A DNA stretch of 64,000 nucleotides, from positions 2,356,001 to 2,420,000 of the forward strand of contig CATNEN010000011.1 of the NCBI GenBank assembly GCA_950097015.1, written 5' to 3'. A program made the translations under genes and the position numbers. Source of the DNA: Macrostomum hystrix. Taxonomy: Eukaryota; Animalia; Platyhelminthes. Shown piece by piece: positions 1,183 through 63,455 of the stretch; within the stretch, counting starts at the first letter, position 1, and every line of letters begins with the position of its first letter. A model generated the notes under the pieces. The model saw nothing but the letters and a program-made list of their open reading frames with translations. It was not told where the DNA came from and searched no databases.

Positions 1183-3433
1183 GAAACTTATACTTTTACA
1201 TCAATAGCTCAGTCTCTAGATTTTCCGGCGTCAACGACACGCCCGAAGGTCACGCTGGTGCCCACTAGCGGATGGCTCAAAGCCGAATCCATGAGAGGTT
1301 GGGCTAGCTGCATGGGACAGGTGCACAAAAACAGAATCACCTATCTGAGACGATTAGATGTACCCATAGGAATGCTTCCAGAGGGTCACAACACGTACCG
1401 CGCTCCCTTGGCGGGCTACTTTGCCTCCCTCTCTCTATTTCCCTCCCCTATCTCCCTCTCAACTCATTAGTTGTAACCTATGTCACCCAGCGATCTCTCT
1501 ATATCATTGTACTTTTTGTACTGCATGCATGACAGGTTGTATTGATTTAGTGTTCTGATCATGACCTTGTGTATGCAGTATCCAAGGGTCTCTTTGCAGT
1601 TTTTATTTTTAGAAACTGTAATCCATAGCATAAATCTTTTTATACAATGACGTATTTTTAGTATCTAGTCCACGTATAAACACCACAACTGACTTTTTTG
1701 GTGGCAAAAGCTGTTAAGCGAATCGCAACGCCAATTAATTACTGCTCTGTGACTGGCGGCACGATCGAACAGCGATAAATATTTTTAAGGATTGTCAAGG
1801 AGAATAATTTAAAAGGCAAACAGCAAAAAATGCAAATAATGGATTTGTAAAATAAAACTCATTCTCTTCTCCTTTGTCTTGACTCTTTAGGCCCCAATTT
1901 CTATCCTTCTATGACGTGTCTCATGTGCATGTACATTACCTCATAACTTAATATGATCTCGTCTCTGTCTCTCTCCATCCATCTCTCATCTCCCCCAGTC
2001 TATCTTCCCCTCACTCTCCCTCTCACCCTTTGTGACCATATTGCATTCATTCATTTATTTATATATATTGCTTTTTCGCGAATGTATGTTCTGTATAGTC
2101 TCACCAATAGTTTTTGTCGCAGGCCTAACTTCTTCAATGTAAAGTTTTTATCCCAATGATGCCACTAAAGTTGTCGAAGGGCTTATGTAATATATGTATA
2201 CATCTGTATTTGATATATGTTTCTGATATATTAATTCTTAGTAATAATCTTATCACTTAGTTTAGCGTGTCTTATTATGTCTCAGTATATTATTCGAAGT
2301 ATTTTCATACCTCTTGTATAGGAAAAAAATAGATACACTTTAACACGAATCTTTCTCTCTTAATTTGAAAAATTGCTTTTATTTTCCATCTGAATTTCAT
2401 TCTTATTATTTAAACGTGCAGGTGCAAACGACGTTGTTTTTCTACTCAAAACTAATGTGCATTTATACACATTTTAGTCTTGATTTTTTCAAATGTGCGT
2501 TACAATATTGTGCAAAATACGTAATTTAAACACATACGCATTTAACTGTTATTTTTGTTTCATTTCTACCCAGAAGGAATAAGAACTGTATTTTTAGTTG
2601 CTTACTATAGTAAGGCACTGAGAACCTGAGTAATAAAAAATTGTCTTTTTCACTTCACATTTGAAATATAATTACTCAACTGCCGCCTAACCCCGATATT
2701 GATCCCAGCACACCTCCGATCACGTCTTTCCAATCCAAGCTATCCAATAGTAGACCATCAGTTATAACCCCAGACCTCCACCCAAGCTGTGTGTGGCGGT
2801 CTTGGTCCTACACCAGCTTGGTCCTACATAGGGAGGGTGTGTAACACACTAAAAGTGGGGAACGAACCTCGCGCTGGCAGACCGAGACCGGTTTCTGGCT
2901 TGTTTGCCTTCGTCAGTCAGCCATAGCCACACGCAGTCCTCTCCCACCACTCTTAGTGTGCACAGAAGTCTCTTTTAACCTTGCCATTTTTATGGCGATA
3001 CTTTTTAGTGTTATGTGAGAGTTTTGCAGCCAAGTCTTTGCTTTTCTACTGTTGTCAGTAGTCTGAATTGTATCTCTCACAGGGTGAATGACCGACATGC
3101 GCCAAACTGAATGTTGAAAGCGCTAGAGGTTAAAATAAATTAAAAGTTTAATACTTGCGCATTGTAAATGAGCAGATCAGTTGAAGGAAATGTCCTAGTA
3201 GTAGTATATATTACTCTAAAAATAAAAAGAATCTCATTTCGCAGAATATCATCTTCCGTTTAAACTGGTGCACTTTAGTTTTGATTAGCATTTTATATCA
3301 ATATCGATTGAAATTTTTCAATTCATACAATACTATATTTTTTTTACTATATAAAAATAAAAACAAGAACAAAAAACAAAAATATCATACTATATATATT
3401 TTTATTCTGTTGTGCAAATACGACAACAAACCC

Positions 3434-12400: not shown

Positions 12401-12958
12401 TCACAGCATGGAGTCGCAGACAGAATCACAGCAAGGAGTCGCAGACAGAATCACAGCAAGGAGTCGCAGACAGAATCACAGCATGGAGTCGCAGACAGAA
12501 TCACAGCAAGGAGTCGCAGACAGAATCACAGCAAGGAGTCGCAGACAGAATCACAGCAAGGAGTCGCAGACAGAATCACAGCAAGGAGTCGCAGACAGAA
12601 TCACAGCAAGGAGTCTCAGACAGAATCACAGCATGGAGTCGCAGACAGAATCACAGCAAGGAGTCGCAGACAGAATCACAGCATGGAGTCGCAGACAGAA
12701 TCACAGCAAGGAGTCGCAGACAGAATCACAGCAAGGAGTCGCAGACAGAATCACAGCATGGAGTCGCAGACAGAATCACAGCATGGAGTCGCAGACAGAA
12801 TCACAGCATGGAGTCGCAGACAGAATCACAGCATGGAGTCGCAGACAGAATCACAGCAAGGAGTCGCAGACAGAATCACAGCAAGGAGTCGCAGACAGAA
12901 TCACAGCAAGGAGTCGCAGACAGAATCACAGCAAGGAGTCGCAGACAGGATCACAGCT
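3434..12958 (+). repeat. 25-bp tandem satellite, ~380 copies (consensus GCAGACAGAATCACAGCA[T/A]GGAGTC)
   Basis: Direct periodicity of 25 bp. The unit is a dimer of 12/13-bp subrepeats (GAGTCGCAGACA / GAATCACAGCATG), each with a GANTC. Diagnostic variants recur at offsets of 2050 bp (4431/6481, 4911/6961) and 1900 bp (9051/10951, 9741/11641). Confidence 0.97.
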
Positions 12959-13050
12959 AAGGACTACTAAAGTAGACTATAAACGACACTTCAGTCGTCC
13001 TTGCTTTCCACATGTCTAGGACTAGTACACAGATTGCACTTTGTTTAAAG

Positions 13051-13506: not shown

Positions 13507-14877
13507 ACCAATGTCCCCCAGCAGCAGAGAACTAATTTCCCCCAGTAGCAGAGAACTAATTCCCCCCAGCAGCAGAGAACTAATTCTCCCCAGCAGCAGA
13601 GAACCAATTCCCCCCCAGCAGCAGAGAACTAATTCCCCCATCAGCAGCAGAGAACTAATTCCGCCCCAGCAGCAAAGAACTATATTCCCCCCAGCAGCAG
13701 AGAACTAATTCCCCCCCAGCAGCAGAGAACTAATTCCGCCCCAGCAGCAAAGAACTAATTCCCCCCAGCAGCAGAGAACTAATTCCCCCCAGCAGCAGAG
13801 AACTAATTCCCCCCCAGCAGCAGAGAACTAATTCTCCCCAGCAGCAGAGAACCAATTCCCCCCAGCAGCAAAGAACTAATTCCCCCCAGCAGCAGAGAAC
13901 TAATTCCCCCCAGCAGCAGAGAACCAATTCCCCCCCAGCAGCAGAGAACTAATTCTCCCCAGCAGCAGAGAACCAATTCCCCCCCAGCAGCAGAGAACTA
14001 ATTCCCCCATCAGCAGCAGAGAACTAATTCCGCCCCAGCAGCAAAGAACTAATTCCCCCCCAGCAGCAGAGAACTAATTCCCCCCCAGCAGCAGAGAACT
14101 AATTCCCCCCCCCAGCAGCAGAGAACTAATTCCGCCCCAGCAGCAAAGAACTAATTCCCCCCTAGCAGCAGAGAACTAATTCCCCCCAGCAGCAGAGAAC
14201 TAATTCCCCCCCCCCAGCAGCAGAGAACTAATTCCGCCCCAGCAGCAAAGAACTAATTCCCCCCAGCAGCAGAGAACTAATTCCCCCCCCAGCAGCAGAG
14301 AACTAATTCCGCCCCAGCAGCAGAGAACTAATTCCGCCCCAGCAGCAAAGAACTAATTCCCCCCAGCAGCAGAGAACTAATTCCCCCCCCCAGCAGCAGA
14401 GAACTAATTCCGCCCCAGCAGCAAAGAACTAATTCCCCCCCAGCAGCAGAGAACTAATTCCCCCCCAGCAGCAAAGAACTAATTCCCCCCAGCAGCAGAG
14501 AACTAATTCCCCCCCCCAGCAGCAGAGAACTAATTCCGCCCCAGCAGCAAAGAACTAATTCCCCCCTAGCAGCAGAGAACTAATCCCCCCCAGCAGCAGA
14601 GAACTAATTCCGCCCCAGCAGCAAAGAACTAATTCCCCCCAAGCAGCAGAGAACTAATTCCCCCCCAGCAGCAGAGAACTAATTCCCCCCCAGCAGCAGA
14701 GAACTAATTCCCCCCCAGCAGCAGAGAACTAATTCCCCCCCAGCAGCAGAGAACTAATTCCCCCCCAGCAGCAGAGAACTAATTCCCCCCCAGCAGCAGA
14801 GAACTTATTCCCCCCCAGCAGCAGAGAACTAATTCCCCCCAGCAGCAGAGAACTAATTCCGCCCCAGCAGCAGAGAA
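13507..14877 (+). repeat. ~25-bp minisatellite (C)nCAGCAGCAGAGAACTAATT
   Basis: Tandem units with a variable C-run. The first unit (ACCAATGTCCCCCAGCAGCAGAGAAC) is identical to the unit of the 62.4-kb array. Confidence 0.95.
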
Positions 14878-42303: not shown

Positions 42304-44052
42304 TTATCTTTGCTCTCAGCTGTATATGATGTACGAGTAATAATCCTGCGAAGTGCAAAAGTGAGGTTATATTTTTAGTTTTTTTGATGAAGTTTACGAT
42401 GATTATAAAAATAATAAATTATACAAACACATTCAATGAGGTGAGTTTTGAGTTGTGATTTTAGTAGTTGCGATATTTAGTTAACCGCTTTTTGTATTCG
42501 TTTACTCAGTTGGTTGAGCAAATTTGTTTTATTCTATGAAAAAAATATATTAGAAAACGTTTTGTGAAAGTAAACGATTTTTTTGTGTGTTGTGCGCAAG
42601 TTCGTCGATATTTATTAATTTTATTCTCAATAATGATATTTTCGGACTGATTTATAAGTATTTCATCTGTTAGAAGTCTTTTTATTAGTTGCTTGTCGAT
42701 TTTTTGTTGGCTATAACATAATTTTTTTCTGGTACTGGTTCTGGTACTGGTTCTGGTACTGGAAGTATAGACGTCTACAAATATTTTTTTCCAGAAATTG
42801 TTATATATTTTAAGTGCCAAGAGCCTTGTAAAATCATAATTTAAATAAGTTTTGAAGTATAACCCCTGAAGTTGAAATTTCATTTTGCTGTGATCTTATA
42901 ACAATAACTTTTAATATCTTAAATATGTTTCACAAGCAAATGAACTAAACTTCAATTCTTCTAGCTTATCACATTCACTCAAAGGAGACTCTGTCCCAAT
43001 CCATAGGCCTATCAAAGATTATGTTAATTGATGAAATTGGAAGTTCAAAACTGTGCATTTGTATAGCTACATGCTATGTGATGAATGAAAAGTTAATTTG
43101 TAGGCCTATTACCCCTTTCACCTTTGTTTTATGATTCTTTTATGTTACTGACAACATTTTTTTTATGTTACTGTCATAATTATGGTGATCATTAAAAAAG
43201 TCTGGGGGTAGGAAGCAGTGTGTAATTAATTAATTAGCTATGTCCTTTATTAGTGTAACAGGGCATATTACTCTAATTTTCTCTCTCTTGGTAGCGTATC
43301 TCTTGGCACAAGCGGTTTATCCTTCTAAGGCACTGGTCTCTTATTCTCCAGTCTTTGCTGGGCGTTTTCTGTGGATCAGAGGGTCACAGCCTTAAATGAC
43401 CAACTCAACACTTGAACACCTTCTTACTCAGTTATAGCTTATTTGCTTTTCACCACACTGGCACCTTGCTTTGTCTCATAGAAATTGCACTCATTTATAT
43501 ACACAAAAAAGGTTTGTTAAAATGAATGAATTTGATAGAATATTTATAATATTTTACATATAAAATTTTTTAGTGCATTTAAACAAAGAGCATAGGTATG
43601 AATTTGACTTAAAAAATAATAAAAGTATCCCTACTACATTAGCAAATAAATTAAAAAACAAGCACTAATTTATTATAATCTTGGCATATACAAATTGTCA
43701 ATCTGATAAAATTTATTACTTTTAATAAATTTTGTGATAGTTTTGACTAATAAGTTGTTTACATTTTATATAGACTTTTAATCTACATAACAATGTATGG
43801 TCATATTTGTTATGCTATATGATCTTGCCTGCTTCACCTAGTGTCACCAAATTATGTGCTAAAGTATTTATTTTTTAGATTCATCAGTGATGATCTCCTA
43901 TGTAAAATTTTTGTGAATGCATTTTTTTTATTTGAACTTGGCCTATTTCATTTTCAGCCCAGTCTGCATCAATAAGCTTCACTACTTTTGGAAACTGGCT
44001 TTTTAAATAACTGAGTTAAATTATTTTATCTTCAAGAGAATCTGTGCCACAC

Positions 44053-47000
44053 ATGCCACTAAGTATTGGTCGAATTGCATTGTCCAGCGCTGCCAATTAT
44101 TGTCAACTACCAAGGCTTCTGCAGGCACAGCGTCTAATCAATCTGAGAACAATGTCTTCCGCGCCTGGCTATTTGATTAATGAGCCTAAATATGCTTGGC
44201 TGAAGGATCTGGGATTGCAGGTAAATTGTTTTCAAACTCCAATGCTTATTGAATAGCCATTTTTAGGCAGCACAAGCTGATAATTTAAATACTTATTTAG
44301 TTTTTAGCTAGGGCAACCCACGATGGAAATTTCAAAATGGTAGGCTTGCGGTGAGGATTATTTGAGTTAATCCTCTATTAATCCTGTTGAGTTTAATAGA
44401 ACAAAAAAGCGTAGTGGTTTAAGCGTCGGACTAACGACTCGAAAACGGGGGCTTCGATTCCCGACTCTACTAGAGCCATTTGTGTCCTCTACTTTTTTAT
44501 TATACCCGGCCATAATTAGGCCAGTTGCGCTGCTGACAGCACAGCCGCAGCTATTGCGCGGCGCATCGTAAAGCTGCGTACTGCTGTTCAGTCCATGGAC
44601 TGTTGGGATTCGAACCTCAGTTGCCACAGATAATTCTGGTACCCATTTAACATCTAGGCCTAGGGTGAACTGAAACAATGCAGAGTTAAGTTTCTTATTA
44701 TAAGACTCAAAATGTTCTAGTGGAGTAGAAAATCAAACCCTCGACCTCAAAGTCGTGGGTTCGATTGCTCTAACAACTGAGCTACAACCTCCCTAAGCTT
44801 CGACCCCCTAAGCTACAACACCCCTAAGCTACAACCCCTAAGCTACAACCCCCTAAGCTACAACCCCCTAAGCTACAACCCCCTAAACTACAACCCCCTA
44901 AGCTACAACCCTCTCAGCTACAACCCTCTAAGCTACAACCCCCTAAGCTACAACCCCCTAAGCTACAACCCCCTTAAGCTACAACCCCCTAAGCTACAAC
45001 CCCCTAAGCTACAACCCCCTAGGAATATATAATTTAGACCCCCTAAGCTACAAACCCCTAAGCTACAACCCCCTAAGCTACAACCCTCTAAGCTACAACC
45101 CTCTAAGCTACAACCCCCTAAGCTACAACCCCCTAAGCTACAACCCTCTAAGCTACAACCCTCTAAGCTACAACCCTCTAAGCTACAACCCTCTAAGCTA
45201 CAACCATCTAAGCTACAACCCTCTAAGCTACAACCCCCTAAGCTACAACCCCCTAAGCTACAACCCTCTAATCTACAACCCTCTAAGCTACAACCCTCTA
45301 AGCTACAACCCTCTAAGCTACAACCCTCTAAGCTACAACCCCCTAAGCTACAACCCCCTAAGCTACAACCCCCTAAGCTACAACCTCCTTAAGCTACAAC
45401 CCGCTTAAGCTACAACCCCCTAAGCTACGACCCCCTAAGAATATATAATTTAGACCCCCTAAGCTACAACCCCCTAAGCTACAACCCCCTAAGAATATAT
45501 AATTTAGACCCCCTAAGCTACAACCCCCTAAGCTACAACCCCCTAAGCTACACCCCCCTAAGCTACAACCCCCTAAGCTACAAACCCCTAAGCTACAACC
45601 CCTAAGCTACAACCCCTAAGCTACTACCCCTAAGCTACACCCCCCTAAGCTACAACCCCCTAAGCTACAACCCCCTAAGCCGTATTGAGAATTTAGAGAA
45701 TTAACCAGAATTTGCTCTCCCCAAACAATGCCTAATGGCAGGAGGTTAACAAGGGAGTGTACAGCTCAGGCAGTTGGATTGGCAGCGGCAGTAAAATCGA
45801 CTCCGTCTGCCCGGCCAACGGTCGGCCAATCGCGGCGGTGATCGAAGGCACAACAGCTGAGTACAACCAGCTGGTGGAGGCTGCCAGAGAGGCTTGGCCA
45901 ATCTGGGCTGAGACTCCGGCTCCTGCTCGCGGCGAGATAGTTCGCCAGATTGGTGACAATCTGCGCAAGAACCTGCAACCGCTGGGCCGGTTGGTCTCAC
46001 TGGAGATGGGCAAGATTCTGCCTGAAGGCGTCGGCGAAGTTCAAGAATTTGTTGACATCTGCGATTACGCTGTTGGACTGTCGAGAACGATGAGCGGCCT
46101 GGTGAGTAACAAGTCTTTATCTGAGTTGAAACTGAACTGCAACTAAGGTTCGAACTCTTCTCTCAATCAGAATTTCAAAGCTCTAAAACATTCGAGATTG
46201 GTTTTAAAGTGGTTTTAAAGATTTTAAATAGTAGCATTTCTTTAAATGCAGTCGCGCCAGTTACGTTAACAATGTAAAAAAGAAATTATTTTGTCAACCG
46301 CATATTCAGTAGCTATTCATAGCTAATCATGTTAGTGTCTAATCTTACTTGGTCTGAGATTATTAAAGCAAAAGTCATAAGGTTTTCTGTCCCTTCTGTA
46401 AGGTTAGGAAATTCTGCATAGTTCTGCATGGATAGATAATATATTCTTGTATGTAGCCTAAATTAAGACGCCACTTAGTGTCTTAGTGTGCTGAAACTAG
46501 TGATCAGTGGTTTTTATATACTTTAACACTCAATCTCGTCATGCTTAAGATTATTGCGTTAATGTCATAAGGTACAACCACTAGACTCGATGTTTTATCA
46601 AATGATATCAAAGTAGAGAGAATTAGGGATGAATTCGATAATCCACCGGTGGATATCAAAGTAGGAAGAATTATGGATAAATTCGATAATCCACCGGTGG
46701 ATATCAAAGTAGGAAGAATTATGGATAAATTCGATAATCCACCGGAGGAATCAAAGTAGAAAGAATTAGGGATAAATTTGATAATCTTCTGGGGATATCA
46801 AAGTAGAGAGAATTAGGGATAAATTCGATTATCCACCGGAGGATATCAAAGTAGGGAGAATTAGGGATACATTTTATACTCCACTGGAGGATATCAAAGT
46901 AGGGAGAATTAGGGATACATTTTATACTCCACCGGAGGATATCAAAGTAGGGAGAATTAGGGATACATTTTATACTCCACTGGAGGATATCAAAGTAGGG

Positions 47001-50000
47001 AGAATTAGGGATAAATTCGATAATCCTCCGTAGAATATCAAATTAGGGACAGAATGGAGGACAAAATTGATAATCCTATTAAGGATACCAAGCAGGGAGT
47101 AGTGGGTAGATAATTAAAGCAGCTTTTGCTTTTGTGAATCATCCTCGGTAAAGCATGAGAGAATAAGGATTTCACCTCGGCCATTTACTGAGGGATCCTA
47201 TTTATAATTAAACAATCCCAATCGCCACGTCCCAAATATCCCAAAGGTGCTACCGTCGGAACGTCCGCATCACACCCTGCTGGAGAAGTGGAATCCCCTT
47301 GGCGTTGTGGGCGTCATCACGGCCTTCAACTTTCCCTGCGCCGTGTTTGGATGGAATTTCAGCCTATCGGCTGTGTGCGGCAACTGCACATTGTGGAAGG
47401 GCGCGCCAAGCACTCCATTGACAACGCTGGCCGTTACTAAAGTTGTCGCCGAAGTACTGGAGCGCAACAATGTACCCGCTGGCGTCCTGTCAGCGATCTG
47501 CGCCGGCGCTGATGTCGGAGCCGCCATCGCCAACGACGAGCGAATCCCACTGGTGTCATTCACTGGCAGTTGCGGCGTGGGACGACAGGTTCGTGCAATT
47601 CGTGATGCTGCTGAGTTTTATAACACCTGAACCCCATCTAATAGATATCCTAAAATTGCATTCCGTATCTAATACTCGTAGAAATCCTCAAGTCCCATTC
47701 CGTATCTAATAGAAATCCCAAAATCCCATTCCGTAACTGATAGAAATCCTCAAATCCCATTCCGTATCTAATAGAAATCCTAAAGTCCCATTCCGTATCT
47801 AATAGAAATCCTCAAATCCCATTTTGTATCTGAAAAAATCCCTAAATCCCTTTCAGTATCTAATAGAAATCCTCAAGTCCCATTCCGTATCTAATAGAAA
47901 TCCTCAAATCCCATTCCGTATCTAATAGAAATCCTCAAAACCCATTCCGTATCTAATAGAAATCCTCAAATCCCGTTCCGTATCTAATATAAATCCTGTT
48001 ATCCCATTCCGTATCTAATATAAATCCTGTTATCCCATTCCGTATCTAATAGAAATCCTCAAATTCCATTTTGTATCTGAAAAAATTCCTAAATCCCATT
48101 CAGTATCTATTAGAAATCCTCAAGTTCCATTTTGTATCTGAAAAAATCCCTAAATCCCATTCAGTATCTAATAGAAATCCTAAAATCCTATTCCGTATCT
48201 AATGGAAATCCTAAAATCCTATTCCGTATCTAATGGAAATCCTGATATCCCATATCTACTTCTCATTCTCATTCCCATACAATCCCAAGTTTTTGCTCTG
48301 TTTCCTAATAATGCTGCAATAATCTGCAGGTAGCCGTTACCGTAGCGGGCAGATTCGGTCGCAGTCTTCTAGAACTGGGTGGCAACAATGCCATCCTGGT
48401 GAATGCCGATGCCGATCTGGACATGGTGGTCCAATCGGCCGTGTTCGCCTGCGCTGGCACAGCCGGCCAAAGGTGCACCACAACACGCCGGCTGGTGCTG
48501 CACAGCTCCGTGTACGATCAGGTTGTTGCCAGGCTGGCCAAAGCTTTTGAATCTCTCATGACTAAGGCTGGCGATCCTATTGAGTCCGGCGTTCTGTACG
48601 GCCCCCTGCACTCTCTGGCGTCTGTTGAAAGGTGAGCTGATTGAGATTGTTTTAAATCTCCTAGAGATTTTTTTTAATCTCCTAGAGATTTTTTTAAATC
48701 TCCTAGAGATTTTTTTAAATCTCCTAGAGATTTTAAATCTCCTAGAGATTTTTTTAAATCTCCTAGAGATTTTTTTAAATCTCCTAGAGATTTTTTTAAA
48801 TCTCCTAGAGATTTTTTTAAATCTCCTAGAGATTTTTTTAAATCTCCATCCTAGAGATTCTAGATTCTAGAGATTTTTTAAATCCTTTTAGGATTTTCTA
48901 AAATCTAATTGGGTTTAAAGTCTCAATGATAATTTCTCCCGCCCCATCCCGCCTTCCCGTAGGTACGAGTCGGCCATTGCCCGAGCCAAAGCTGACGGCG
49001 GGCACGTGGCCTACGGCGGCAAGCGCTTGGCTAAGCTTGCTAACAGCGGCGGCTACTTTGTCGAGCCCACCATTATCACTGGCCTGAAGCCGGACTCGCC
49101 GCTGGTGCAAGAGGAAACTTTCGCCCCCATTGTTTACGCTCTGAAGTGCGACTCGTTGGACGAGGCTATCAAGATTAACAACTCAGTGCGGGTTTTTTTC
49201 ATTTTTATTGGTTGCTTTATTCATGGTTACACAGATTAAAAATTCTGGGATTTTAAAAGATTGTGGGTTTTTCGGATTCAAAATTATTTGGGATTCTAAG
49301 CTTCTGGCAGGCTTAAAATCCCGGAATTTAAACGGTTCTGAGATTCTGGGATTTGTACTGATCGGGATTCTATGGGTACAACATGTTGGGATTCTGGGAT
49401 TTTATTTAATCTCAGATTATACGAGTAGGATTCATGCAGATTTTAGATTTCGAGATTTAAAACAGATAAAGATTCTGGGATTCAAACCGATTGGGATTCT
49501 AGGATTCAAACTGATTTAGGATTCTGGGATTCGAAAACCGATTGGGATTCTAGGATTCAAACTGATTTAGGATTCTGGGATTCAAACTGATTGGGATTCT
49601 GAGATTCAAACTGATCAAGATTCTCGGATTCAAACTGATCAGGATTCTGGGATTCAAACTGATTGGGATTTTCAAACTGATTAGGATTCTGGGATTTAAA
49701 CTGATCAGGATTCTGGGATTCAAACTGATTGGGATTCTGGGATTCAAACTGATTAGGATTCTAGGATTTAAACTGATCAGGATTCTGGGATTCAAACTGA
49801 TCAAGATTCTGGGATTCAAACTGATTGGGATTCTGAGATTCAAACTGATCAAGATTCTCGGATTCAAACTGATCAGGATTCTGGGATTCAAACTGATTGG
49901 GATTTTCAAACTGATTAGGATTCTGGGATTTTCAAACTGATTAGGATTCTGGGATTTAAACTGATCAAGATTCTCGGATTCAAACTGATCAGGATTCTGG

Positions 50001-51203
50001 GATTCAAACTGATTGGGATTTTCAAACTGATTAGGATTCTGGGATTTAAACTGATCAGGATTCTGGGATTCAAACTGATTGGGATTCTGGGATTCAAACT
50101 GATTAGGATTCTGGGATTTAAACTGATCAGGATTCTGGGATTCAAACTGATCAAGATTCTGGGATTCAAACTGATCAGGATTCTAGGATTTAAACAGATT
50201 TAGGATTCTGGGATTTAAACTGATTTAGGATTCTAGGATTTAAACAGATTTAGGATTCTGGGATTTAAACTGATTTAGGATTCTAGGATTTAAACAGATT
50301 TAGGATTCTGGGATTTAAACTGATTTAGGATTCTTGGATTTAAACTGATAGGGATTTTGGAATTTAAACAGATTTAGAATTCTTAGATTTTTAACAGATT
50401 TAGGATTCTGGGATTTAAACAGATTTGGTATTCTGGGATTTAAACTCATTTAGGATTCTGGGATTTAACTGATCAGTATTCTTGGATTCAAACTGATCAA
50501 GATTCTGGGATTCAAACTGATCAGGATTCTGGGATTCAAACTGATCAGGATTCTGGGATTCAAACTGATTGGGATTCAGTAATTTAAACAGATTTAGGAT
50601 TCTGGGATTCTAACTGATTGGGATTCTGGAATTTAAACAGATTTAGGATTCTTGGATTTAAACTGATTTGGTATTCTAGGATTTAAACTGATTTAGGATT
50701 CTAGGATTTAAACAGATTTGGTATTCTGAAATTTAAACAGATTTGGGATTCTGGGATTCAAACTGATGAGGATTCTGGGATTTAAACAGATTTAGGATTC
50801 TGGGATTAAAACTGATTGGAATTTTAAAATGTGAATAGCTTGTGATTTGAGTATTTCGATGATGATTTTTTAATTTTCTAAGAATTTCAATAAAGTTAGT
50901 TATGCAGTCAAACGAGCCCCATCAACCACCCAGGTAAAGCAGGGCCTCTCATCCAGCCTGTTCACCCGCGACCTGAGCAACCTGTTCCACTGGATTGGTC
51001 CCAGCGGTTCCGACTGCGGCCTAGTCAATATCAACATACCGACGTCTGGCGCCGAAATTGGCGGAGCCTTCGGCGGCGAGAAGCACACCGGGGGAGGCCG
51101 CGAGTCGGGCAGCGACTCCTGGAAGCAGTACATGCGACGCAGCACCTGCACTATCAATTATGGGCACGATCTGCCACTGGCTCAGGGCATCAAGTTTGAA
51201 TAG
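44053..51203 (+). CDS. ALDH7A1: Alpha-aminoadipic semialdehyde dehydrogenase (antiquitin), 6 exons, 554 aa from the first ATG
   Basis: Exons 44053-44220, 45742-46101, 47247-47588, 48330-48631, 48963-49185 and 50934-51203; all GT-AG and in frame (1665 nt). Family motifs [62 protein letters not shown] and [30 protein letters not shown]. Confidence 0.96.
44405..44490 (+). mobile_element. tRNA-derived SINE, 5' fragment (ALDH7A1 intron 1)
   Basis: GCGTAGTGGTTTAAGCGTCGGACT...GCTTCGATTCCCGACTCTACTAG...TTTGTGTCCT matches the SINE head. Confidence 0.65.
44505..44792 (-). mobile_element. tRNA-derived SINE, near full length, minus strand
   Basis: Reverse complement matches the 61527 copy (GGTACCCATTTAACA, GGTGAACTGAAACAATGCAGAGTTAAG, ACAGCACAGCCGCAGCTATTGCGCGGCGCATC), ending in GAGCTACAACCTC (SINE head). 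Confidence 0.75.
44793..45680 (-). repeat. 15-bp minisatellite (CTAAGCTACAACCCC), ~55 copies, contiguous with the SINE head
   Basis: Period 15, with three AATATATAATTTAGACCCC interruptions. Its reverse complement GGGGTTGTAGCTTAG matches the SINE 5' end GAGGTTGTAGCCTAG. Confidence 0.93.
46600..47090 (+). repeat. 48-bp minisatellite in ALDH7A1 intron 2
   Basis: GGATATCAAAGTAGGGAGAATTAGGGATA...CCACCGGA, period 48 (46861/46909), ~10 copies. Confidence 0.9.
47630..48250 (+). repeat. 31-bp minisatellite in ALDH7A1 intron 3
   Basis: AATAGAAATCCTCAAATCCCATTCCGTATCT, period 31 (47881/47912). Confidence 0.9.
48650..48890 (+). repeat. 21-bp minisatellite in ALDH7A1 intron 4
   Basis: CTCCTAGAGATTTTTTTAAAT tandem, ~11 copies. 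Confidence 0.92.
49480..50825 (+). repeat. 24-bp minisatellite in ALDH7A1 intron 5
   Basis: GGATTCTGGGATTCAAACTGATCA tandem, period 24, ~55 copies. Confidence 0.92.
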
Positions 51204-51337
51204 ACTTTTTGCTGAAGATTTATTTGAATTCGCGCGCTTTTTAAAGACTGACTGAACTGAAGAAACTCGCAGCTTAAAGGTTGGGATTTCGATTTTACAG
51301 GGAAAAGGCTTGAGTGTTGAAATGTTTGGTTGTTCAG

Positions 51338-51392
51338 CATCATTCATAATCAGGACTTACGACTTGAAGGTCGGGGGTTCGAACTCCTCAAA
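51338..51392 (+). mobile_element. Short SINE fragment (B-box region)
   Basis: GGACTTACGACTTGAAGGTCGGGGGTTCGAACTCC matches the head of the other copies. Confidence 0.5.
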
Positions 51393-52174
51393 AACTGTCC
51401 TCCCTAATTTATGTTTGAAAGACACTAAAAGTTTGTTTGGCGCGAATTTAAAATGATAAAATCCAGCCCTAATGAATGCTATGATTTTGGTTTTTGCCAA
51501 TATATCTGCTTGTTGATTTTCCTAGGCAATTTTCAATCCGAATTGTCTCATTGTGCTTGTCAAATTCATCCCTTCTTTTCCCAACTCCCAATAGTAACAA
51601 TAGCATGTTGCTAATCAGCTCATTAAACAGCTATTGTTTTCATCCAACACATCCGCTTCACCATTTAGCTTTGGTGATCTGCTTAGCTTGTCATCAGTTT
51701 TGATTTATTTTTATTTCAGCTTAAAACTGTTCAATACTTTTCATGCAATAGTCTTCGTGAACTTCAATTATTGGCCTACATCTCACTTTTTCACTCTTCA
51801 TCCTATATCGGGTCCGTCAGTTTTCTATTGCCTATTTTTTAACCCAAAAGTCGTTACAGTCGCTCATTTTAAAACAAACTTTATTGAGGTATTTTTTTAT
51901 GAAATAAGATCCGCTCTCTTGTTGGAGTAAAGACCATTTTGACTAATAAAACTTCATTATATATTCACACCGGTAGATTTTTTGTCATTTAACATGTGTC
52001 TTCGACTTTTTAAATCATTTTTTATTAAAAAACTAAATTCGATCGTTTTCTTAGATAGACTAACATTTTATAATGCCGAAAAATTACAAATACTGAATGA
52101 TTGCTTGTCCTTATATAATGAATTTTAACACAGCTGCAAAATATTCACTCATTTTAGTATTCGCCTAGAATCTT

Positions 52175-53455
52175 ACCTCCTTTGATGTTGCCGCCAACTA
52201 TCTACTTTCCAGTTTAAGAATAATCCCGGATCCTTAACTCTAGTCCTTTGATGTTGCCGCCAACTATCTACTTTCCAGTTTAAAAATAATCCCTGACCCT
52301 TATCTTTAGTCACTTGATGTTGCCGCCTACCATCTACTTTCAAATTTTAGAATAATCCCTGATCCTTAACTCTAGTCCTTTGAAGTTGCCGCCGACTATC
52401 AACTTTCCAGTTTAAGAATAATCCCTGATCCTTAACTCTAGTCCTTTGATGTTGCCGCTAACTGTCTACTTTTCAGTTTAAAAATAATCCCTGATCCTTA
52501 ACTCTACTCCTTTGATGTTGCCGCCAGCTATTAACATTCCAGTTTTAGAATAATCCCTGATCCTAACTCTAGTCCTTTGATGTTGCCGCCAACTATCTAC
52601 TTTCCAGTTTAAAAATAATCCCTGACCCTTAACTCTACTCCTTTGATGTTGCCGCCAGCTATTAACATTCCAGTTTAAGAATAATCCCTGACCCTTAACT
52701 CTACTCCTTTGATGTTGCCGCCAGCTATTAACATTCCAGTTTAAGAATAATCCCTGATCCTTAACTCTAGTCCTTTGATGTTGCCGCCAGCTATTAACAT
52801 TCCAGTTTAAGAATAATCCCTGATCCTTAACTCTAGTCCTTTGATGTTGCCGCCAGCTATTAACATTCCAGTTTAAGAATAATCCCTGATCCTTAACTCT
52901 AGTCCTTTGATGTTGCCGCTAACTATCTACTTTCCAGTTTAAAAATAATCTCTGACCCTTACTCTACTCCTTTGATGTTGCCGCCAGCTATTAACATTCC
53001 AGTTTAAGAATAATCCCTGACCCTTAACTCTACTCCTTTGATGTTGCCGCCAGCTATTAACATTCCAGTTTAAGAATAATCCCTGATCCTTAACTCTAGT
53101 CCTTTGATGTTGCCGCCAGCTATTAACATTCCAGTTTAAGAATAATCCCTGATCCTTAACTCTAGTCCTTTGATGTTGCCGCCAGCTATTAACATTCCAG
53201 TTTAAGAATAATCCCTGATCCTTAACTCTAGTCCTTTGATGTTGCCGCCAGCTATTAACATTCCAGTTTAAGAATAATCCCTGATCCTTAACTCTAGTCC
53301 TTTGATGTTGCCGCTAACTATCTACTTTCCAGTTTAAAAATAATCTCTGACCCTTACTCTACTCCTTTAATGTTGCCGCCAGCTATTAACATTCCAGTTT
53401 AAGAATAATCCCTGACCCTTATCTCTAGTCCTTGAGAGATGTTGCCGCCAATTAT
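52175..53455 (+). repeat. 66-bp tandem array, ~20 copies, between ALDH7A1 and Aurora
   Basis: TCCTTTGATGTTGCCGCCAGCTATTAACATTCCAGTTTAAGAATAATCCCTGATCCTTAACTCTAG, period 66 (52771/52837). Confidence 0.96.
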
Positions 53456-53500
53456 GAAAACTGAGCTTTAACACACGTTTGTCCTCGTTCCTTTGATGTT
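52179..53500 (+). promoter_or_regulatory. Candidate multimerised TCF/LEF response element (HMG site + adjacent Helper site)
   Basis: 14 units read CCTTTGA[T/A]GTT immediately followed by GCCGCC[A/G]. A last HMG-only site at 53490-53500 lies 15 bp before the Aurora ATG. Motif match only; no functional evidence. Confidence 0.4.
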
Positions 53501-53515
53501 ATTTTAAGATTAAAA

Positions 53516-55808
53516 ATGGCGACGGCTTTGACATCGATTGAAAACCAGCTCAACAATCAGCCGCAGCAGCAGCAGCAGCAGCAGCAGCCTCTATCGCCGC
53601 AGTCGTCCGGTGTCCAGACTCGCATGTCAAAAATCTCAGACTTTGACATTGGCTGCCCTCTGGGCAAGGGCAAATTCGGCAATGTCTACTTAGCCAAAGA
53701 GCGAAAGCACGACTTTCTTGTGGCCCTGAAGATACTGTTCAAAAGCCAGCTAGTCAAGGGTCGCATGGAGCATCAGCTGCATAGAGAGATTGAAATCATG
53801 AGCCATCTGAGGCATCCGCACATTCTGCAGCTCTATACAATGTTCTTCGATGAGAAACGTATCTACCTGGTCCTGGAGTACGCCTTCCGCGGCCAGATGT
53901 ACTCACTGCTCACCCGGATGGGGCGTTTCAGCGAGCGGCGCTCCGCTACCTACATGTACCAGCTGGCTGACGCCCTGGCCTTCTGTCACAGCAAGCAGGT
54001 CATTCACAGGGGTGAGTACCTGCTACCTGTTATTTATAAAAGTTCAAAGTTCAATTCGTGTCCTAGTTCTAGACACAAATTGCTAAAGCCTTGCTAAAGG
54101 ACACATATTGCTTCCCTCCAATTGGCTAAGAATCGAACTCCTGACCTCACGTCTATAATTTTCGGCAATTTGCGTTGTTTCTAGTTTTGTCGGGAACAGA
54201 GGTTGTAGTCTAGAGGTTAGAGCGTCTAAGTCACGACTTAAAAGTCGGGGGTTCGATTCCTGACTCCAATGGAACAATTTGTGTCCTTTAGCAAGACACT
54301 TAAATCTGCATTGCTTCAGTTCGCCCAGCTGTTAAGTTGGCATCATTATTAGCTGGGGTAATTGAGGCTGGCCGTGGCGTCCCCCCAGTCCATGGACTGA
54401 CCAGACTGAAAAGCTGTACGCAGCCTTCAGATGCGCTAGGGCAGATGTAATCAATTATTAACTACTATTAATAGTTGTGTCAAATCCACAGAGTCTTACT
54501 CGCCAATAGGGCCTAGTATTCTAAGCTAGATTATCCAATCATTCGTGCCGCAGACATCAAGCCTGAGAACCTGCTGCTGGGCTTCTACTACGAGTTGAAG
54601 CTGGCGGACTTTGGCTGGTCTGTGCACGCGCCTTCGCAGCGCAGGCGCACCCTGTGCGGCACCCTCGACTACCTGCCGCCAGAGATGGTCACCGGGGTCA
54701 CTCACGACGAAGGCGTCGACGTCTGGACAATGGGCGTTCTCTGCTACGAGATGCTGCACGGTTCGCCTCCATTCGAAGACGAAGATGAGCACAGTACTCA
54801 GAAGCGGATTGCCAGGGTTGAGTTCAGCTTTCCGGAGCATTTCACACCTTTAGCTAGGTGAGAAAACTTGTTTGCCCGGCAAATGGTACTTTCCCATTTC
54901 AATTTCCCGCTAAAAAATAGGCATGTTTCTTTGGGTGATTCCAGTTGGAATCTGCGGTGTTTCCAGAAAAAGAAACAGCCGAACGCTGGAAACATACCAA
55001 TCGGATGATTCCATGCTTAGAATCTACCCAACTGGGCGTTTTCTCGGTGCTTCTTGGTGGCGAAATAGAATCACCCAAGTGGGAGGTCCTTAAATTGCTA
55101 TGCTTATTTGTATTAACAATTATTTCCTAACAATTATGCATAACATCTTTCAAAACCTTCCCAGTCAGCATCGTCGGGATATTCAGTGATTTTTGTTGAA
55201 GACCCCGGTGACAGGGACAACTGACATCGCTCTGTATAAAACTCGATGGCGAATCCATATTACTATAAGTAGTTAAATGCTGTAATAATCAACAGTCAAA
55301 CCGATATGGTCTACAATAACAGCCGACATGGTTTTTGTGATTCTGAAATTTGTTTTATTGCTTAGAGTAGAAAATTTTAGCCGTTGTTCTGGCGTTTCTT
55401 GGCGTTTCTATATGAATATTTTAGTAGATACCGAAGGAAAGAAAAAACTGGGTACTTGAAATGCACCCCGTGATCTTTCTATTGTATAAAAACATCCCAT
55501 TACTCCCATTATTAATCCTTGGAAAAGTACTTGAAAATCCTAGTCACACATCTTGGGAACATGAAAGATATTGTCTATGAATGAATCCTCAAACCAGGGA
55601 TCTGATCTCGCGCATTCTGCGCAAGCGGTCCAAGGATCGAATCCGGCTGCCGGGGATCAAATGTCATCCGTGGATTGAGCAGCACGCCACTAAGACTGTG
55701 GACACGGATCCTAGTCACCTGGAGTCCTACCTGTTGGAGGATTTCAATCGCACAATGAACGAAGAGTCCAAGGCTCTACTCACGGACTGCACAGCTGAGT
55801 CGCAGTGA
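53516..55808 (+). CDS. AURK: Aurora kinase (tentatively Aurora B-like), 3 exons, 336 aa
   Basis: Exons 53516-54011, 54554-54857 and 55598-55808 (1011 nt, GT-AG, in frame). Motifs [65 protein letters not shown]. Thr rather than Gly at the Aurora-A G198-equivalent position (LYTMFFD). Confidence 0.95.
54088..54152 (-). mobile_element. SINE fragment, minus strand (Aurora intron 1)
   Basis: Reverse complement reads GAGGTCAGGAGTTCGATTCTTAGCC...ATATGTGTCCTTTAGCAAGGC. Confidence 0.6.
54196..54470 (+). mobile_element. tRNA-derived SINE, near full length (Aurora intron 1)
   Basis: A-box GTAGTCTAGAGGTT, B-box GGTTCGATTCC, body TGTGTCCTTTAGCAAGACACTTAA...CAGTTCGCCCAGCTGTTAAG, AT-rich tail. Confidence 0.8.
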
Positions 55809-58164: not shown

Positions 58165-60273
58165 TCACAGCAGGTTGAGCTGGGTCATGTACACCCTGCG
58201 TAAGATTGTCTGACAATCGGCAAATACTCGCCTGATGTTCTCCGTATCAACGGCGGTTGTGTAATGCGGATAGCACCTGCGCTGCCCATCACCCTGGGCG
58301 ATGGCCTGAAACTTGTCGCGGACGAAGCACTTGGCGCGAGTGAGCTCCGGCTCCTCGTTAGGATGCTCCGAGTCAGGGGGCGGCTGCGGGTAGACTTTGT
58401 ACTCCTCGAAGAAGTCTTCCAGTTTGGTCTTGCCTTTCAAGATCTTCTCCTAGAAGTCGGGTGGAAAGCTTTTGTCAAGATTGTAAGGATTCTTGAACGC
58501 CAAGAGTTAGCGTTCATGAATCGCATTCATAATTGATTCTCCCCTCCTACATTCTGCCCAAAAAAGAGGGTGCTAGCCCCCGATGGGGAGGTGGGTGCGA
58601 AGCCCCCACTATCTAACCATAGACAAAATGTCATAAAGAAAGCTTTCTCCACAGCTAAGAAGAGAAAAACAAAATTACCATAGACAATATTGATCTATTG
58701 ACAATAGATCTATTTGTCCATTGACAATATTGAGTTATTCTGGAAAATAGGAGGAATTTGAAGATTAACCAACGTCATTGAGTTTGTACTGCTCGTATTT
58801 GAGTAGCGACTGATGGCAAGCGAAAAACCAGTAATAATATTAACTAGACTTTCACCCGTTGTTTTGTTTATTGTCTAAAAAGAAACTTCGATCCTGCACC
58901 AATGGTGCACTGGACCTAAAGGAGACTTTGCGATAGACAAAATAAATTCTGCACGCTTGAGCGTGCAAGATCAGCAATTCTGCACGCAGAATCAACTAAG
59001 AATGCACGATTTGCACACTTTGCACGACACAAAACACATCTGTAGCAAATGAAAGAAAAGAACTCCGGAAAATACGACCACATACCTTACTGCAGCGCTA
59101 CAAAATCTTTTCTTTCAAGTAATTAATTTGTTTCCTAGTTATTTTCGTTGGCTGTTAAATACGAGCTAACTGTTAAACTGGCTCTTACGCAAGAAAAGTT
59201 CGGACCCAACTTTCATACGAGTACCTTGAGAAAAAACATTCAATTACCTGAAAAGTGTCCTGCTTATTTAGAAAAAGAATGATTGAGTTCTGCTTTAGAT
59301 AGCGGTTATTCCAGATGTTCTGAAACAGCTCGATTGACTCTTTCAGCCGATTTTGTGTGGGATCTTCGCGCAATCTAGAATCGTAGCCAGAGCAGGCGCA
59401 CACAAAGATGACAGCGGTGACGTCGCTAAACACCTGCAAGTGAGTTGGTTGATGACTCTTAAGTTTAGATTTGCCCTGACACTGACCGAATAAGCTTGGA
59501 CTCCAGTCGAATCTCTGGAAATTTCTCACCTGAATCCATTTTCTTCGCTCCTCTCTTTGCCCACCGACGTCGAACATGTGAAACATAACTTTCTCAACCG
59601 TGAACTTCGTCTCAAAGATGCCGGATGTGAGCACACGACAGCGCAGGATGTCCTGCTCGTCTGGCAGGTACTCCGGCTTGGCCACTTCCGCGCACTTGTC
59701 CAAGAACCACTTGGCAGAGTCGATCAGCTGATACTCGTTTGCCCGACTGAAGGCCTCTTGGACGCCCTTGTCCTTCCACAGTTTGCAACAATAGTCAAAG
59801 AAAATATCCGGATAGCTGAAGTCCTTGGCGACTGACTCGTTCTGAACGTAGTCGATGTACTCCTGATACTCCGGGTGCTCCAGCGGCACTGCCGGATTCA
59901 AGTTGGGCATGGCTCCCGTGATTGACAGCATGCCGTCGCGAATGTTCCTCCGGATGTCTGGCACCTTCTCGCGCCTGGCGGCATCGTCAAAGCCTGTCAG
60001 GTAGAGAATCTGCATCTGCTTGATCAGGGTGGACTTGCCAGACTCTCCCGCGCCGACTACGGGAATCTTGTGCGTCATGGCGAGCTGCTTCTTCTCCGCT
60101 TTCAGCTTCTTCTCGAAGTCTTCCTTCTTGGTGTCCTTCGTCTTCTCCTGTTTAGGCGGCTTGGAATTCGTCTTGGCCGAGCTGCTGCTCGCTGACGCGC
60201 CGGCTGATGACGAGACCTTCCCGTTGCCAACTTCGCCATCGTTGTCTTTGGTTTTTGGCCGAAAGCAGCTCAT
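58165..60273 (-). CDS. GNAS: G protein alpha subunit, Gs class, divergent; 3 exons, 404 aa
   Basis: Exons 60273-59530, 59433-59248 and 58449-58165 (1215 nt, all phase 0, GT-AG). Motifs [38 protein letters not shown] and [17 protein letters not shown]. Symbol indicates class; one-to-one orthology unverified. Confidence 0.9.
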
Positions 60274-61526: not shown

Positions 61527-61840
61527 GCAGAGGTTGTAGCCTAGTGGTTTGGGCGTCGGACTCACCACTTGAAGGTCGGGGTTCGATTCTTGACTCCACT
61601 GGATCAATTTGTGTCCTTTAGCGAGGCACTTAACTCTGCATTGCTTCAGTTCACCCTGCTGTTAAGTGGGTACCAGCATTAGCTGGGATAATTGAAGGTG
61701 GGTGTGGCGTCCCCCCAGTCCGTGGACTGAACAGCTGTACGCAGCCTTCAGATGCGCCGCGCAATAGCTGCGGCTGTGCTGTCGGCTGCACATCTGACCC
61801 AATTGGGGCAGGTGTAATCAATTATAAATTATTATTAATA
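61527..61840 (+). mobile_element. tRNA-derived SINE, full-length reference copy (~310 bp)
   Basis: Pol III A-box TAGCCTAGTGGTT and B-box GGTTCGATTC, central TGTGTCCTTTAGCGAGGCACTTAAC...CACCCTGCTGTTAAGTGGGTACC body, TAT/ATT-rich tail. Confidence 0.82.
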
Positions 61841-62153: not shown

Positions 62154-62404
62154 GTAAGTAAGTCAGGTCAACAATTCACCATCAGAGTCAGTATTAAAGA
62201 AAAAATGATGATGCATGACAGACATGACTGAGATTTTTTTCAATTAGGGAACGATTGTTTTTTGCTTCGAGTTAATAACTCACACTTTTAGCCCCTCACC
62301 TGAGGATCTAAGAATTTCACTGATTTACAAAATCACGCCCACATTATGCTAATGATCCCATCAATAATTTTACTTTAATCTCGCTGAGCAAAGCATTCCA
62401 CAAA

Positions 62405-63455
62405 GCAGAAGAGAACCAATGTCCCCCAGCAGCAGAGAACCAATGTCCCCCAGCAGCAGAGAACCAATGTCCCCCAGCAGCAGAGAACCAATGTCCCCCA
62501 GCAGCAGAGAACCAATGTCCCCCAGCAGCAGAGAACCAATGTCCCCCAGCAGCAGAGAACCAATGTCCTCCCAGCAGCAGAGAACCAATGTCCCCCAGCA
62601 GCAGAGAACCAATGTCCTCCCAGCAGCAGAGAACCAATGTCTCCCAGCACCAGAGAACAATGTCCCCCAGCAGCAGAGAACCAATGTCCTTTCACTCTCC
62701 CAGCAGCAGAGAACCAATGTCCTTCCACTCTCCCAGCAGCAGAGAACCAATGTCCCCCCAGCAGCAGAGAACCAATGTCCCCCAGCAGCAGAGAACCAAT
62801 GTTCCCCAGCAGCAGAGAACCAATGTCCCCCAGCAGCAGAGAACCAATGTCCCCCAGCAGCAGAGAACCAATGTCCCCCAGCACCAGAGAACAATGTCCC
62901 CCAGCAGCAGAGAACCAATGTCCCCCAGCAGCAGAGAACCAATGTCCTTCCACTCTCCCAGCAGCAGAGAACCAATGTCCCCCCAGCAGCAGAGAACCAA
63001 TGTCCCCCAGAAGCAGAGAACCAATGTCCCCCAGCAGCAGAGAACAATGTCCCCCAGCAGCAGAGAACCAATGTCCTTTCACTCTCCCAGCAGCAGAGAA
63101 CCAATGTCCTTCCACTCTCCCAGCAGCAGAGAACCAATGTCCCCCCAGCAGCAGAGAACCAATGTCCCCCCAGCAGCAGAGAACCAATGTCCCCCAGAAG
63201 CAGAGAACCAATGTCCCCCAGCAGCAGAGAACCAATGTCCCCCAGCAGCAGAGAACCAATGTTCCCCAGAAGCAGAGAACCAATGTCCCCCAGCAGCAGA
63301 GAACCAATGTCCCCCAGCAGCAGAGAACCAATGTCCCCCAGCACCAGAGAACCAATGTCCCCCAGCAGCAGAGAACCAATGTCCCCCAGCAGCAGAGAAC
63401 CAATGTCCCCCAGCAGCAGAGAACCAATGTTCCCCAGAAGCAGAGAACCAATGTC
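62405..63455 (+). repeat. 23-bp minisatellite (CCCCAGCAGCAGAGAACCAATGT) with longer variant units
   Basis: Direct periodicity; same family as the 13.5-kb array. Overlapping ORFs on both strands are artefacts. Confidence 0.95.

What the first reader, a model, noticed from the sequence alone, without database searches (positions are those of the whole stretch)
52175..53516. Natural TOPflash-like array: ~20 x 66-bp units pairing a TCF HMG site with a C-clamp Helper site, directly upstream of Aurora kinase
Seen: by my count 14 of ~20 units carry CCTTTGA[T/A]GTT immediately followed by GCCGCC[A/G]. Three more keep the HMG site with GCCGCTA, and a lone HMG site sits 15 bp before the Aurora ATG. Established: the invertebrate TCF/Pangolin HMG consensus is SCTTTGWWSWW, C-clamp TCFs bind a Helper site GCCGCCR, and bipartite HMG+Helper pairs define Wnt response elements. 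From memory the zero-spacer same-orientation pair is a high-affinity arrangement; this should be verified. Inference: tandem amplification may have built a copy-number-tunable Wnt/beta-catenin enhancer on a mitotic kinase, linking Wnt to proliferation. An ~18-bp composite match is unlikely by chance, but it was found by eye among many repeats. A TTTTAAG acceptor just before the ATG means the array could be intronic or in an outron.
Basis: partly seen in the sequence, partly recalled or inferred. Interest (0 to 1): 0.82.

Follow-up and report, generated by a model that had tools for sequence, protein, structure and literature searches.

The report
TCF-site minisatellite upstream of Aurora kinase
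A young 66-base tandem repeat fills the gap in front of a cell-division kinase gene, and each copy carries a textbook binding site for the Wnt-pathway factor TCF; this is most likely one chance site copied about 17 times, not a proven Wnt switch.

Summary
A 66-bp x 19.3 array lies at 52177-53450. Fourteen units carry CCTTTGA[T/A]GTTGCCGCC[A/G], three carry GCCGCTA, and a lone HMG site ends 15 bp before the Aurora ATG at 53516. The core is 17/18 identical to the synthetic FF0 probe of Archbold 2014, one of the two configurations Drosophila TCF binds best.

Function is not shown. All copies descend from one founder: a 395-bp higher-order repeat is present, with 262 bp duplicated without change. 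The lone site is the truncated last unit of the array. The motif columns are not significantly better kept than the rest of the unit. An exact founder match is expected 0.26 to 2.4 times per 0.11-1 Gb genome by chance. Tandem arrays make up 48.6% of this window, and every intron of the neighbouring aldehyde dehydrogenase gene holds one.

RNA contigs place the array between that gene's poly(A) site and the Aurora start codon. DNA depth shows no genome-wide spread of the unit. Three trematode Aurora homologues have no such sites upstream. Whether this species' TCF has a C-clamp could not be tested.

The scan noted another 'TOPFlash-like' block in this genome (s1-313517). Most likely this is a neutral, locus-specific minisatellite; I put a real Wnt enhancer at about 0.12.

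The parts
52177..53430 (+). 19 full 65-66-bp units of the minisatellite. There are two unit subtypes and a 395-bp (6-unit) higher-order repeat. Fourteen units carry an exact HMG+Helper FF0 composite and three carry GCCGCTA.
53431..53476 (+). Degenerate unit 20. The HMG site is destroyed by a 3-bp insertion and a substitution (CCTTGAGAGATGTT). The Helper GCCGCCA is kept, and the rest of the unit is heavily diverged.
53488..53500 (+). Truncated unit 21. It is the first 12-13 bases of a unit (TCCTTTGATGTT), that is the 'lone' HMG site at 53490-53500, followed by ATTTTAAG and the ATG.
53516..54011 (+). Aurora kinase exon 1. The ATG is at 53516, and a (CAG)10 poly-Q tract lies at 53558-53588.
54554..54857 (+). 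Aurora kinase exon 2.
   Evidence: spliced contigs X3 record 18, X2 record 10, X9 record 24
55598..55808 (+). Aurora kinase exon 3, ending with the TGA stop codon.
50934..51985 (+). Last exon of the upstream aldehyde dehydrogenase gene. Coding runs to the TAG at 51201-51203, and AATAAA lies at 51945. RNA contigs end at 51976-51992, about 190 bp before the array.

Best explanation
This is a young, locus-specific minisatellite. An 18-base sequence that matches the optimal bipartite TCF site (HMG site immediately followed by a Helper site, 'FF0') sat in the founder 66-bp unit. Replication slippage and unequal exchange then copied it along with the rest of the unit. The most recent event duplicated a block of at least four units.

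The array fills the roughly 1.5-kb spacer between the poly(A) site of an aldehyde dehydrogenase gene and the Aurora start codon. In this genome nearly every non-coding spacer holds such an array. Its most likely effect on Aurora is passive: promoter-proximal spacer DNA. Any TCF binding would be a by-product, not a selected Wnt switch.

Shown: the array, the motif, its identity to FF0, the single origin of all copies, and the intergenic position. Inferred: neutrality and a chance origin for the founder site.
For: - Single origin. The best self-match is at shift 395 (93%) against 83% at shift 66, and 52705-52966 is identical to 53100-53361. The 'lone' site is the truncated last unit of the same register.
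- No excess conservation of the motif. Variable columns are 6/18 in the motif against 25/51 elsewhere (Fisher p=0.28). Other 18-column windows are about as quiet. By my count from that alignment, five of about seven independent changes inside the motif break the consensus.
- Chance. The exact FF0 consensus has probability about 1e-9 per position per strand at this base composition. That gives 0.26 expected per 110 Mb and 2.4 per Gb, and about ten times more if the other favoured configurations count. A 1-mismatch hit sits in the G-alpha coding exon at 59976-59993.
- Context. Tandem arrays make up 48.6% of the window. Each of the five aldehyde dehydrogenase introns holds a different minisatellite, and two other arrays carry 9 copies each of the TCF core CTTTGAT.
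- No deep conservation. Three trematode Aurora homologues have no 11-bp HMG site, no Helper site and no tandem array within up to 6 kb upstream.
- Little RNA. The only RNA contig listed on the array is a 96-mer that occurs 5 times there. Its depth per copy is 1.6, against 4.2 for an intron contig and 21.6 for exons.
- Biology (inference). An essential mitotic kinase is needed in every dividing cell. Planarian TCFs are mainly expressed in the CNS (PMC5643146).
Against: - The match is very strong: about 30 bits, 17/18 identical to the published high-affinity FF0 probe, and the one difference is allowed by the consensus.
- Fourteen optimal sites within 1.3 kb of a start codon exceed synthetic Wnt reporters in number. 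They would be expected to bind a C-clamp TCF if the chromatin is open.
- The motif window ranks 2nd of 69 for low variation.
- The unit is not a genome-wide repeat: DNA contig depth is 0-288 on the array, about 70-90 on unique flanks, and 474,000 on a SINE nearby.
- Human AURKA is reported to be a direct beta-catenin/TCF4 target (review PMC5410356).
Confidence: 0.65

Rival explanations
1. This is a functional Wnt/beta-catenin response element. A C-clamp TCF of this animal occupies the 14-17 FF0 sites. It represses Aurora with Groucho when Wnt is off and activates it with beta-catenin when Wnt is on, and copy number sets the gain.
For: - The match to the optimal FF0 bipartite site is exact.
- The array lies immediately 5' of the ATG in an intergenic spacer.
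- The unit is not dispersed across the genome.
- Human AURKA is reported as a beta-catenin/TCF4 target.
- Flatworms have TCF paralogues and a signalling beta-catenin.
Against: - All sites are copies of one founder.
- The motif shows no significant extra conservation.
- A chance founder is expected about 0.3-2 times per genome.
- There is no counterpart upstream of trematode Aurora homologues.
- The C-clamp, TCF occupancy and Wnt response are all untested.
- Fourteen strong TCF/Groucho sites on an essential mitotic gene would be costly in Wnt-off dividing cells (inference).
Confidence: 0.12
2. The array is a multiplied piece of the Aurora proximal promoter or 5' leader. The founder unit was the native sequence just upstream of the ATG, so each unit offers a spare start site or a spare 3' splice / trans-splice acceptor (TTCCAG, TTTAAG). 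Alternatively each unit offers cell-cycle elements: GTTGCCGC is 7/8 of the E2F consensus TTTSSCGC as I recall it.
For: - The array's register runs to 15 bp before the ATG, and the last unit is truncated there.
- Every unit carries TTCCAG and TTTAAG, like the TTTTAAG before the ATG.
- The spacer leaves little other room for a promoter.
- Low-level RNA signal is present on the array.
Against: - RNA depth per copy on the array is below intron background.
- The 5' end of the mRNA is unresolved because contigs break at the CAG repeat.
- The E2F resemblance is recalled from memory and imperfect.
- Similarity of the last 15 bp before the ATG to the unit is not above chance.
Confidence: 0.1
3. The array is cargo of a transposable element (Helitron, foldback or similar) that happened to insert upstream of Aurora.
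For: Earlier unchecked notes report Helitrons and a foldback element carrying minisatellites in this genome (s1-321993; s1-337247). SINE copies lie close by.
Against: - The window holds no second copy of the unit.
- DNA contig depth on the array is at or below that expected for this one locus.
- No terminal repeats flank the array.
- An exact-match scan of metagenome contigs found nothing.
Confidence: 0.05

Closest known systems
Drosophila Wnt-dependent cis-regulatory modules with HMG-Helper pairs (nkd, fd96C; Archbold et al. 2014, PMC4154663) and their synthetic FF0 reporters
   Same: Both have an 11-bp HMG site SCTTTGWWSWW directly followed by GCCGCCR in the same orientation (FF0). The array core is 17/18 identical to the SynFF0 oligo.
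   Different: Natural modules hold a few dispersed, independently evolved pairs, and they have been tested for TCF binding and Wnt response. Here there are 14-17 identical copies from one founder, spaced 66 bp apart, in a flatworm, and nothing has been tested.
TOPflash / Super-TOPflash reporters
   Same: Both are multimerised TCF sites placed in front of a promoter.
   Different: This array is natural. It has Helper sites and a 66-bp spacing with 48 bp of unrelated sequence per unit. Its response to beta-catenin is unknown.
Promoter-proximal minisatellites (VNTRs) that carry transcription-factor motifs, such as the human INS and HRAS1 VNTRs (named from my own knowledge, not checked here)
   Same: Both are head-to-tail units of tens of bases next to a gene, with unit variants and higher-order structure, and with a factor motif repeated because the unit is repeated.
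   Different: Copy-number polymorphism and any effect on expression are not shown here.
Human AURKA as a beta-catenin/TCF4 target (Dutta-Simmons 2009 and Dere 2015, as cited in PMC5410356)
   Same: An Aurora kinase gene is linked to TCF sites in its 5' region.
   Different: The human case rests on ChIP and expression data in cancer cells. This one rests on sequence alone, and three trematode Aurora homologues show no such sites.

Membership tests
Bipartite TCF Wnt response element (W-CRM) | HMG site matching SCTTTGWWSWW | tested here: met
   18 matches, all on the + strand and all in the array or its truncated last unit.
Bipartite TCF Wnt response element (W-CRM) | Helper site GCCGCCR close to the HMG site in a favourable orientation and spacing | tested here: met
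   14 units are exact FF0. FF0 and AK6 are the best-bound and most active configurations in PMC4154663.
Bipartite TCF Wnt response element (W-CRM) | The organism's TCF carries a C-clamp | not testable with these tools
   Only this window of the genome can be read. No note on a TCF gene exists in the scan. Papers on planarian TCF-1 to -3 do not mention a C-clamp.
Bipartite TCF Wnt response element (W-CRM) | TCF occupancy and beta-catenin-dependent transcription | not testable with these tools
   This needs EMSA, CUT&Tag, a reporter assay or RNAi.
Bipartite TCF Wnt response element (W-CRM) | Sites kept by selection, either within the array or across species | tested here: inconclusive
   Within the array the motif columns are not significantly less variable (p=0.28). 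Distant trematode homologues have no sites. No DNA of a close sister species was available: organism C is RNA only.
Minisatellite / VNTR | Head-to-tail units of 10-100 bp with unit variants | tested here: met
   66 bp x 19.3 copies at 91% identity, with two subtypes.
Minisatellite / VNTR | Growth by slippage or unequal exchange, seen as higher-order blocks and older, degenerate edge units | tested here: met
   A 395-bp higher-order repeat, a 262-bp identical block, and degenerate unit 20 and truncated unit 21 at the 3' edge.
Minisatellite / VNTR | Single locus rather than a dispersed satellite or TE | tested here: met
   DNA contig depth is 0-288 on the array, 70-90 on unique DNA and 474,000 on a SINE. 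Contig depth is only a rough guide to copy number.
Minisatellite / VNTR | Copy-number polymorphism among individuals | tested here: inconclusive
   No contig bridges the array in any run.

The most novel reading that the evidence does not exclude
Tandem amplification of a single optimal HMG+Helper site has produced a natural, copy-number-variable 'TOPflash' that puts a mitotic kinase under Wnt/beta-catenin/TCF control in a flatworm.
Probability: 0.12. Interest if true: 0.7.

Novelty: new member of a known kind. Interest (0 to 1): 0.35.

Why it matters
If the array did bind TCF, it would show a strong signalling enhancer arising in one step from minisatellite expansion, with a gain that individuals could vary by copy number. 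It would also be a ready-made natural Wnt reporter for flatworm biology. As it stands, the case illustrates a different point: in a genome that is half tandem repeat, one chance match to a long composite motif can look like 14 independent sites. Counts inside arrays must be collapsed to one event before they are compared with chance.

Tried and rejected
- **Close relatives of the Aurora protein, for comparing upstream DNA.** The word search found nothing above 68% identity. The three trematode loci I fetched are distant, may be paralogues, and have gene models that may lack 5' exons.
- **5' end of the Aurora mRNA.** All runs are Logan contigs. They break at the CAG repeat at 53550-53597, so the start site or any trans-splice site could not be read.
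- **Copy-number polymorphism.** No contig bridges the array.
- **Organism B as an independent sample.** Its contigs are identical to the window, so it adds nothing. Organism C shows 4 substitutions and 2 gaps over 323 bases of the 3' UTR, but it has only RNA-like contigs and none on the array.
- **Other copies of the unit.** There are none in the window, none in metagenome contigs and none in the scan's index by sequence. The operators state that a blank in that index means nothing.
- **A known RNA family or a structured strand.** Rfam gave no match and the fold z-score is 0.25.
- **Coding potential.** No ORF longer than 56 aa crosses the array. One minus-strand frame of the consensus unit has no stop, but it also has no start codon, and the 65-bp units break the frame.
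- **C-clamp in flatworm TCFs.** No paper in the library states it, and no TCF sequence could be obtained by reference.
Full report
**1. Observation**

The region 52177-53450 is a tandem array of 66-bp units. Tandem Repeats Finder reports 19.3 copies at 91% matches, with extra periods of 329 and 395. I cut the array into 19 units plus a degenerate 20th.
- CCTTTGA[T/A]GTTGCCGCC[A/G] occurs 14 times, only in the array and only on the + strand.
- Three more units have GCCGCTA.
- One unit (u19) has CCTTTAAT, one (u03) has CACTTG with GCCGCCT, and unit 20 has lost the HMG site to a 3-bp insertion.
- A lone CCTTTGATGTT lies at 53490-53500 and ends 15 bp before the ATG at 53516.
- Shuffles of the window give 0.01 matches at up to one mismatch, against 19 observed.

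**2. The genes on either side**

The ORF starting at 53516 is a protein kinase (Pfam Pkinase). Its best solved relatives are Aurora B and Aurora A (E = 4.5e-52 and about 1e-50). Reading the splice sites gives exons 53516-54011, 54554-54857 and 55598-55808, 336 codons in all. Spliced contigs in three public runs join exactly these pieces (X3 record 18, X2 record 10, X9 record 24).

Upstream on the same strand lies an aldehyde dehydrogenase gene (Pfam Aldedh on four exons). By eye its C-terminus looks like ALDH7A1. Its last exon starts at 50934, and the contigs' loose end there matches 49156-49185. The stop codon is at 51201-51203, AATAAA is at 51945, and RNA contigs end at 51976-51992.

The array is therefore intergenic. 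It begins about 190 bp after the neighbour's poly(A) site, and its last, truncated unit ends 15 bp before the Aurora ATG. It is not an intron of the upstream gene.

**3.

Yes. Archbold et al. 2014 (PMC4154663) define HMG sites by the 11-bp TCF/Pangolin consensus and Helper sites by GCCGCCR. They find that two configurations are bound best: AK6 (IC50 5.1 nM) and FF0, where the Helper lies immediately downstream in the same orientation (IC50 9.4 nM). These two are also the most active in cells and imaginal discs, and the most enriched in TCF-bound chromatin. Their SynFF0 oligo reads CCTTTGATCTTGCCGCCA. The array core reads CCTTTGATGTTGCCGCCA, which is 17 of 18 identical, and the single difference falls on an S position.

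**4. How many independent events?**

One.
- The array matches itself better at a shift of 395 bp (93%) than at 66 bp (83%).
- 52705-52966 is identical to 53100-53361, so a block of at least four units was copied very recently.
- The 3' edge holds an old, decayed unit (53431-53476). After it come the first 12-13 bases of another unit, in the same register. This fragment is the 'lone' HMG site.

All 18 HMG sites and 16 Helper sites therefore descend from one founder 18-mer.

**5. Selection on the motif?**

Nothing significant appears.
- In the 19-unit alignment, 6 of 18 motif columns vary against 25 of 51 others (Fisher p=0.28).
- The motif window ranks 2nd of 69 for low variation, but windows in the middle of the unit are almost as quiet. 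Most variation elsewhere comes from a few subtype-defining changes.
- By my count from that alignment, about five of the seven independent changes inside the motif break the consensus and two keep it. This does not differ detectably from the 13% of possible changes expected to keep it, given so few events.

**6. Chance**

At this window's base composition, the exact FF0 consensus has probability about 1e-9 per position per strand (about 30 bits). That gives 0.00015 expected per window, 0.26 per 110 Mb and 2.4 per Gb. Counting the other favoured configurations raises these figures tenfold.
- A founder match somewhere in the genome is thus unremarkable. A scan of many genomes would meet dozens.
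- The window itself holds a one-mismatch hit inside the G-alpha coding exon at 59976-59993.
- Tandem arrays cover 48.6% of this window. Each of the five aldehyde dehydrogenase introns carries a different minisatellite (15, 48, 31, 21 and 24-bp units). Two other arrays carry nine copies each of the bare TCF core CTTTGAT.
- An earlier, unchecked note reports another 'TOPFlash-like' block upstream of a Sox gene in this genome.
- A minisatellite in a 1.5-kb spacer is the rule in this window, and a motif inside a unit is multiplied automatically.

**7. Dispersed or local?**

In the DNA run X1, contig depth on the array is 0-288. Unique flanks sit at 70-90, and a SINE in Aurora intron 1 reaches 474,000. 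Contig depth is a poor copy-number measure, but nothing suggests a genome-wide family. No second copy exists in the window, and an exact-pattern scan of metagenome contigs found nothing.

**8. Transcription**

The only RNA contig listed on the array (X3 record 17, 96 nt, depth 8.2) is a sequence that occurs five times in the array. That is about 1.6 per copy, below an intron contig (4.2) and far below the exons (21.6). The array is not part of the mature mRNA. Whether it is an outron or pure promoter cannot be told, because every contig breaks at the CAG repeat at 53550-53597. Rfam finds nothing, and the strand does not fold better than shuffles.

**9. Relatives**

Earlier notes call this genome a flatworm; I did not verify that independently. 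The protein search found no Aurora above 68% identity.
- Organism B's contigs are identical to the window.
- Organism C shows 4 substitutions and 2 gaps over 323 bases of the neighbour's 3' UTR, but it offers only RNA-like contigs.
- I fetched three trematode homologues (Trichobilharzia, Schistosoma, Paragonimus). Within up to 6 kb upstream they have no 11-bp HMG site, no Helper site and no tandem array.

This is weak evidence against an old Wnt-to-Aurora link in flatworms. The loci are distant and possibly paralogous.

**10. The C-clamp**

Non-vertebrate TCFs generally have a C-clamp (abstract of PMC4267635). Planarians have three TCF paralogues, mostly expressed in the CNS, and only TCF-2 keeps all the domains examined. 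That paper does not mention the C-clamp. I could not obtain a TCF sequence of this species, so this key test is open.

**11. Reading**

The most likely explanation (0.65) is a neutral, young, locus-specific minisatellite that happened to contain an optimal TCF composite. The Wnt-enhancer reading (0.12) is not excluded. The site is as good as any synthetic one, it is next to a promoter, and human AURKA is reported as a beta-catenin/TCF4 target. Lesser rivals are a multiplied promoter or leader segment with repeated acceptor-like TTCCAG/TTTAAG motifs (0.10), and TE cargo (0.05).

Noticed in passing
window 44044-51203 (+): This is an aldehyde dehydrogenase gene (ALDH7A1-like by eye). Each of its five introns holds a different minisatellite: 15-bp at 44780-45680, 48-bp at 46604-47049, 31-bp at 47636-48253, 21-bp at 48643-48906, and 24-bp at 49460-50817.
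   Followed up: partly
window 54197-54404, 61528-61734, inverted copy at 44506-44740; also 51242-51412: This is a tRNA-like SINE family. One copy lies in Aurora intron 1 and a fragment lies in the neighbour's 3' UTR. Contig depth in the DNA run is about 474,000 against about 75 for unique DNA, which implies thousands of copies.
   Followed up: partly
window 54833-55345: A second high-copy repeat lies in Aurora intron 2. DNA contig depth reaches 77,760.
   Followed up: no
window 59185-60273 (-): A G-protein alpha subunit exon (Pfam G-alpha, 2.6e-80). It contains a one-mismatch match to the HMG+Helper composite at 59976-59993, which is a clear chance hit in coding sequence.
   Followed up: partly
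window 53558-53588: A (CAG)10 tract codes for poly-Q near the N-terminus of Aurora. All public contigs break here.
   Followed up: no
window 13515-14877 and 62404-63455: Two arrays of 25-bp and 24-bp units share the core CAGCAGCAGAGAAC, so the same minisatellite family occurs at two places 48 kb apart.
   Followed up: no
window 3281-13019 (+): A 25-bp x 381 array is open in all three + frames. It produces mechanical ORFs of about 3,200 codons that are unlikely to be genes.
   Followed up: no
window 52507-53430, within B-type units: The more common unit subtype also carries AACATTCCAG, which matches the TEAD/Scalloped core CATTCC as I recall it. A 66-bp unit can match several factor motifs by eye.
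   Followed up: no
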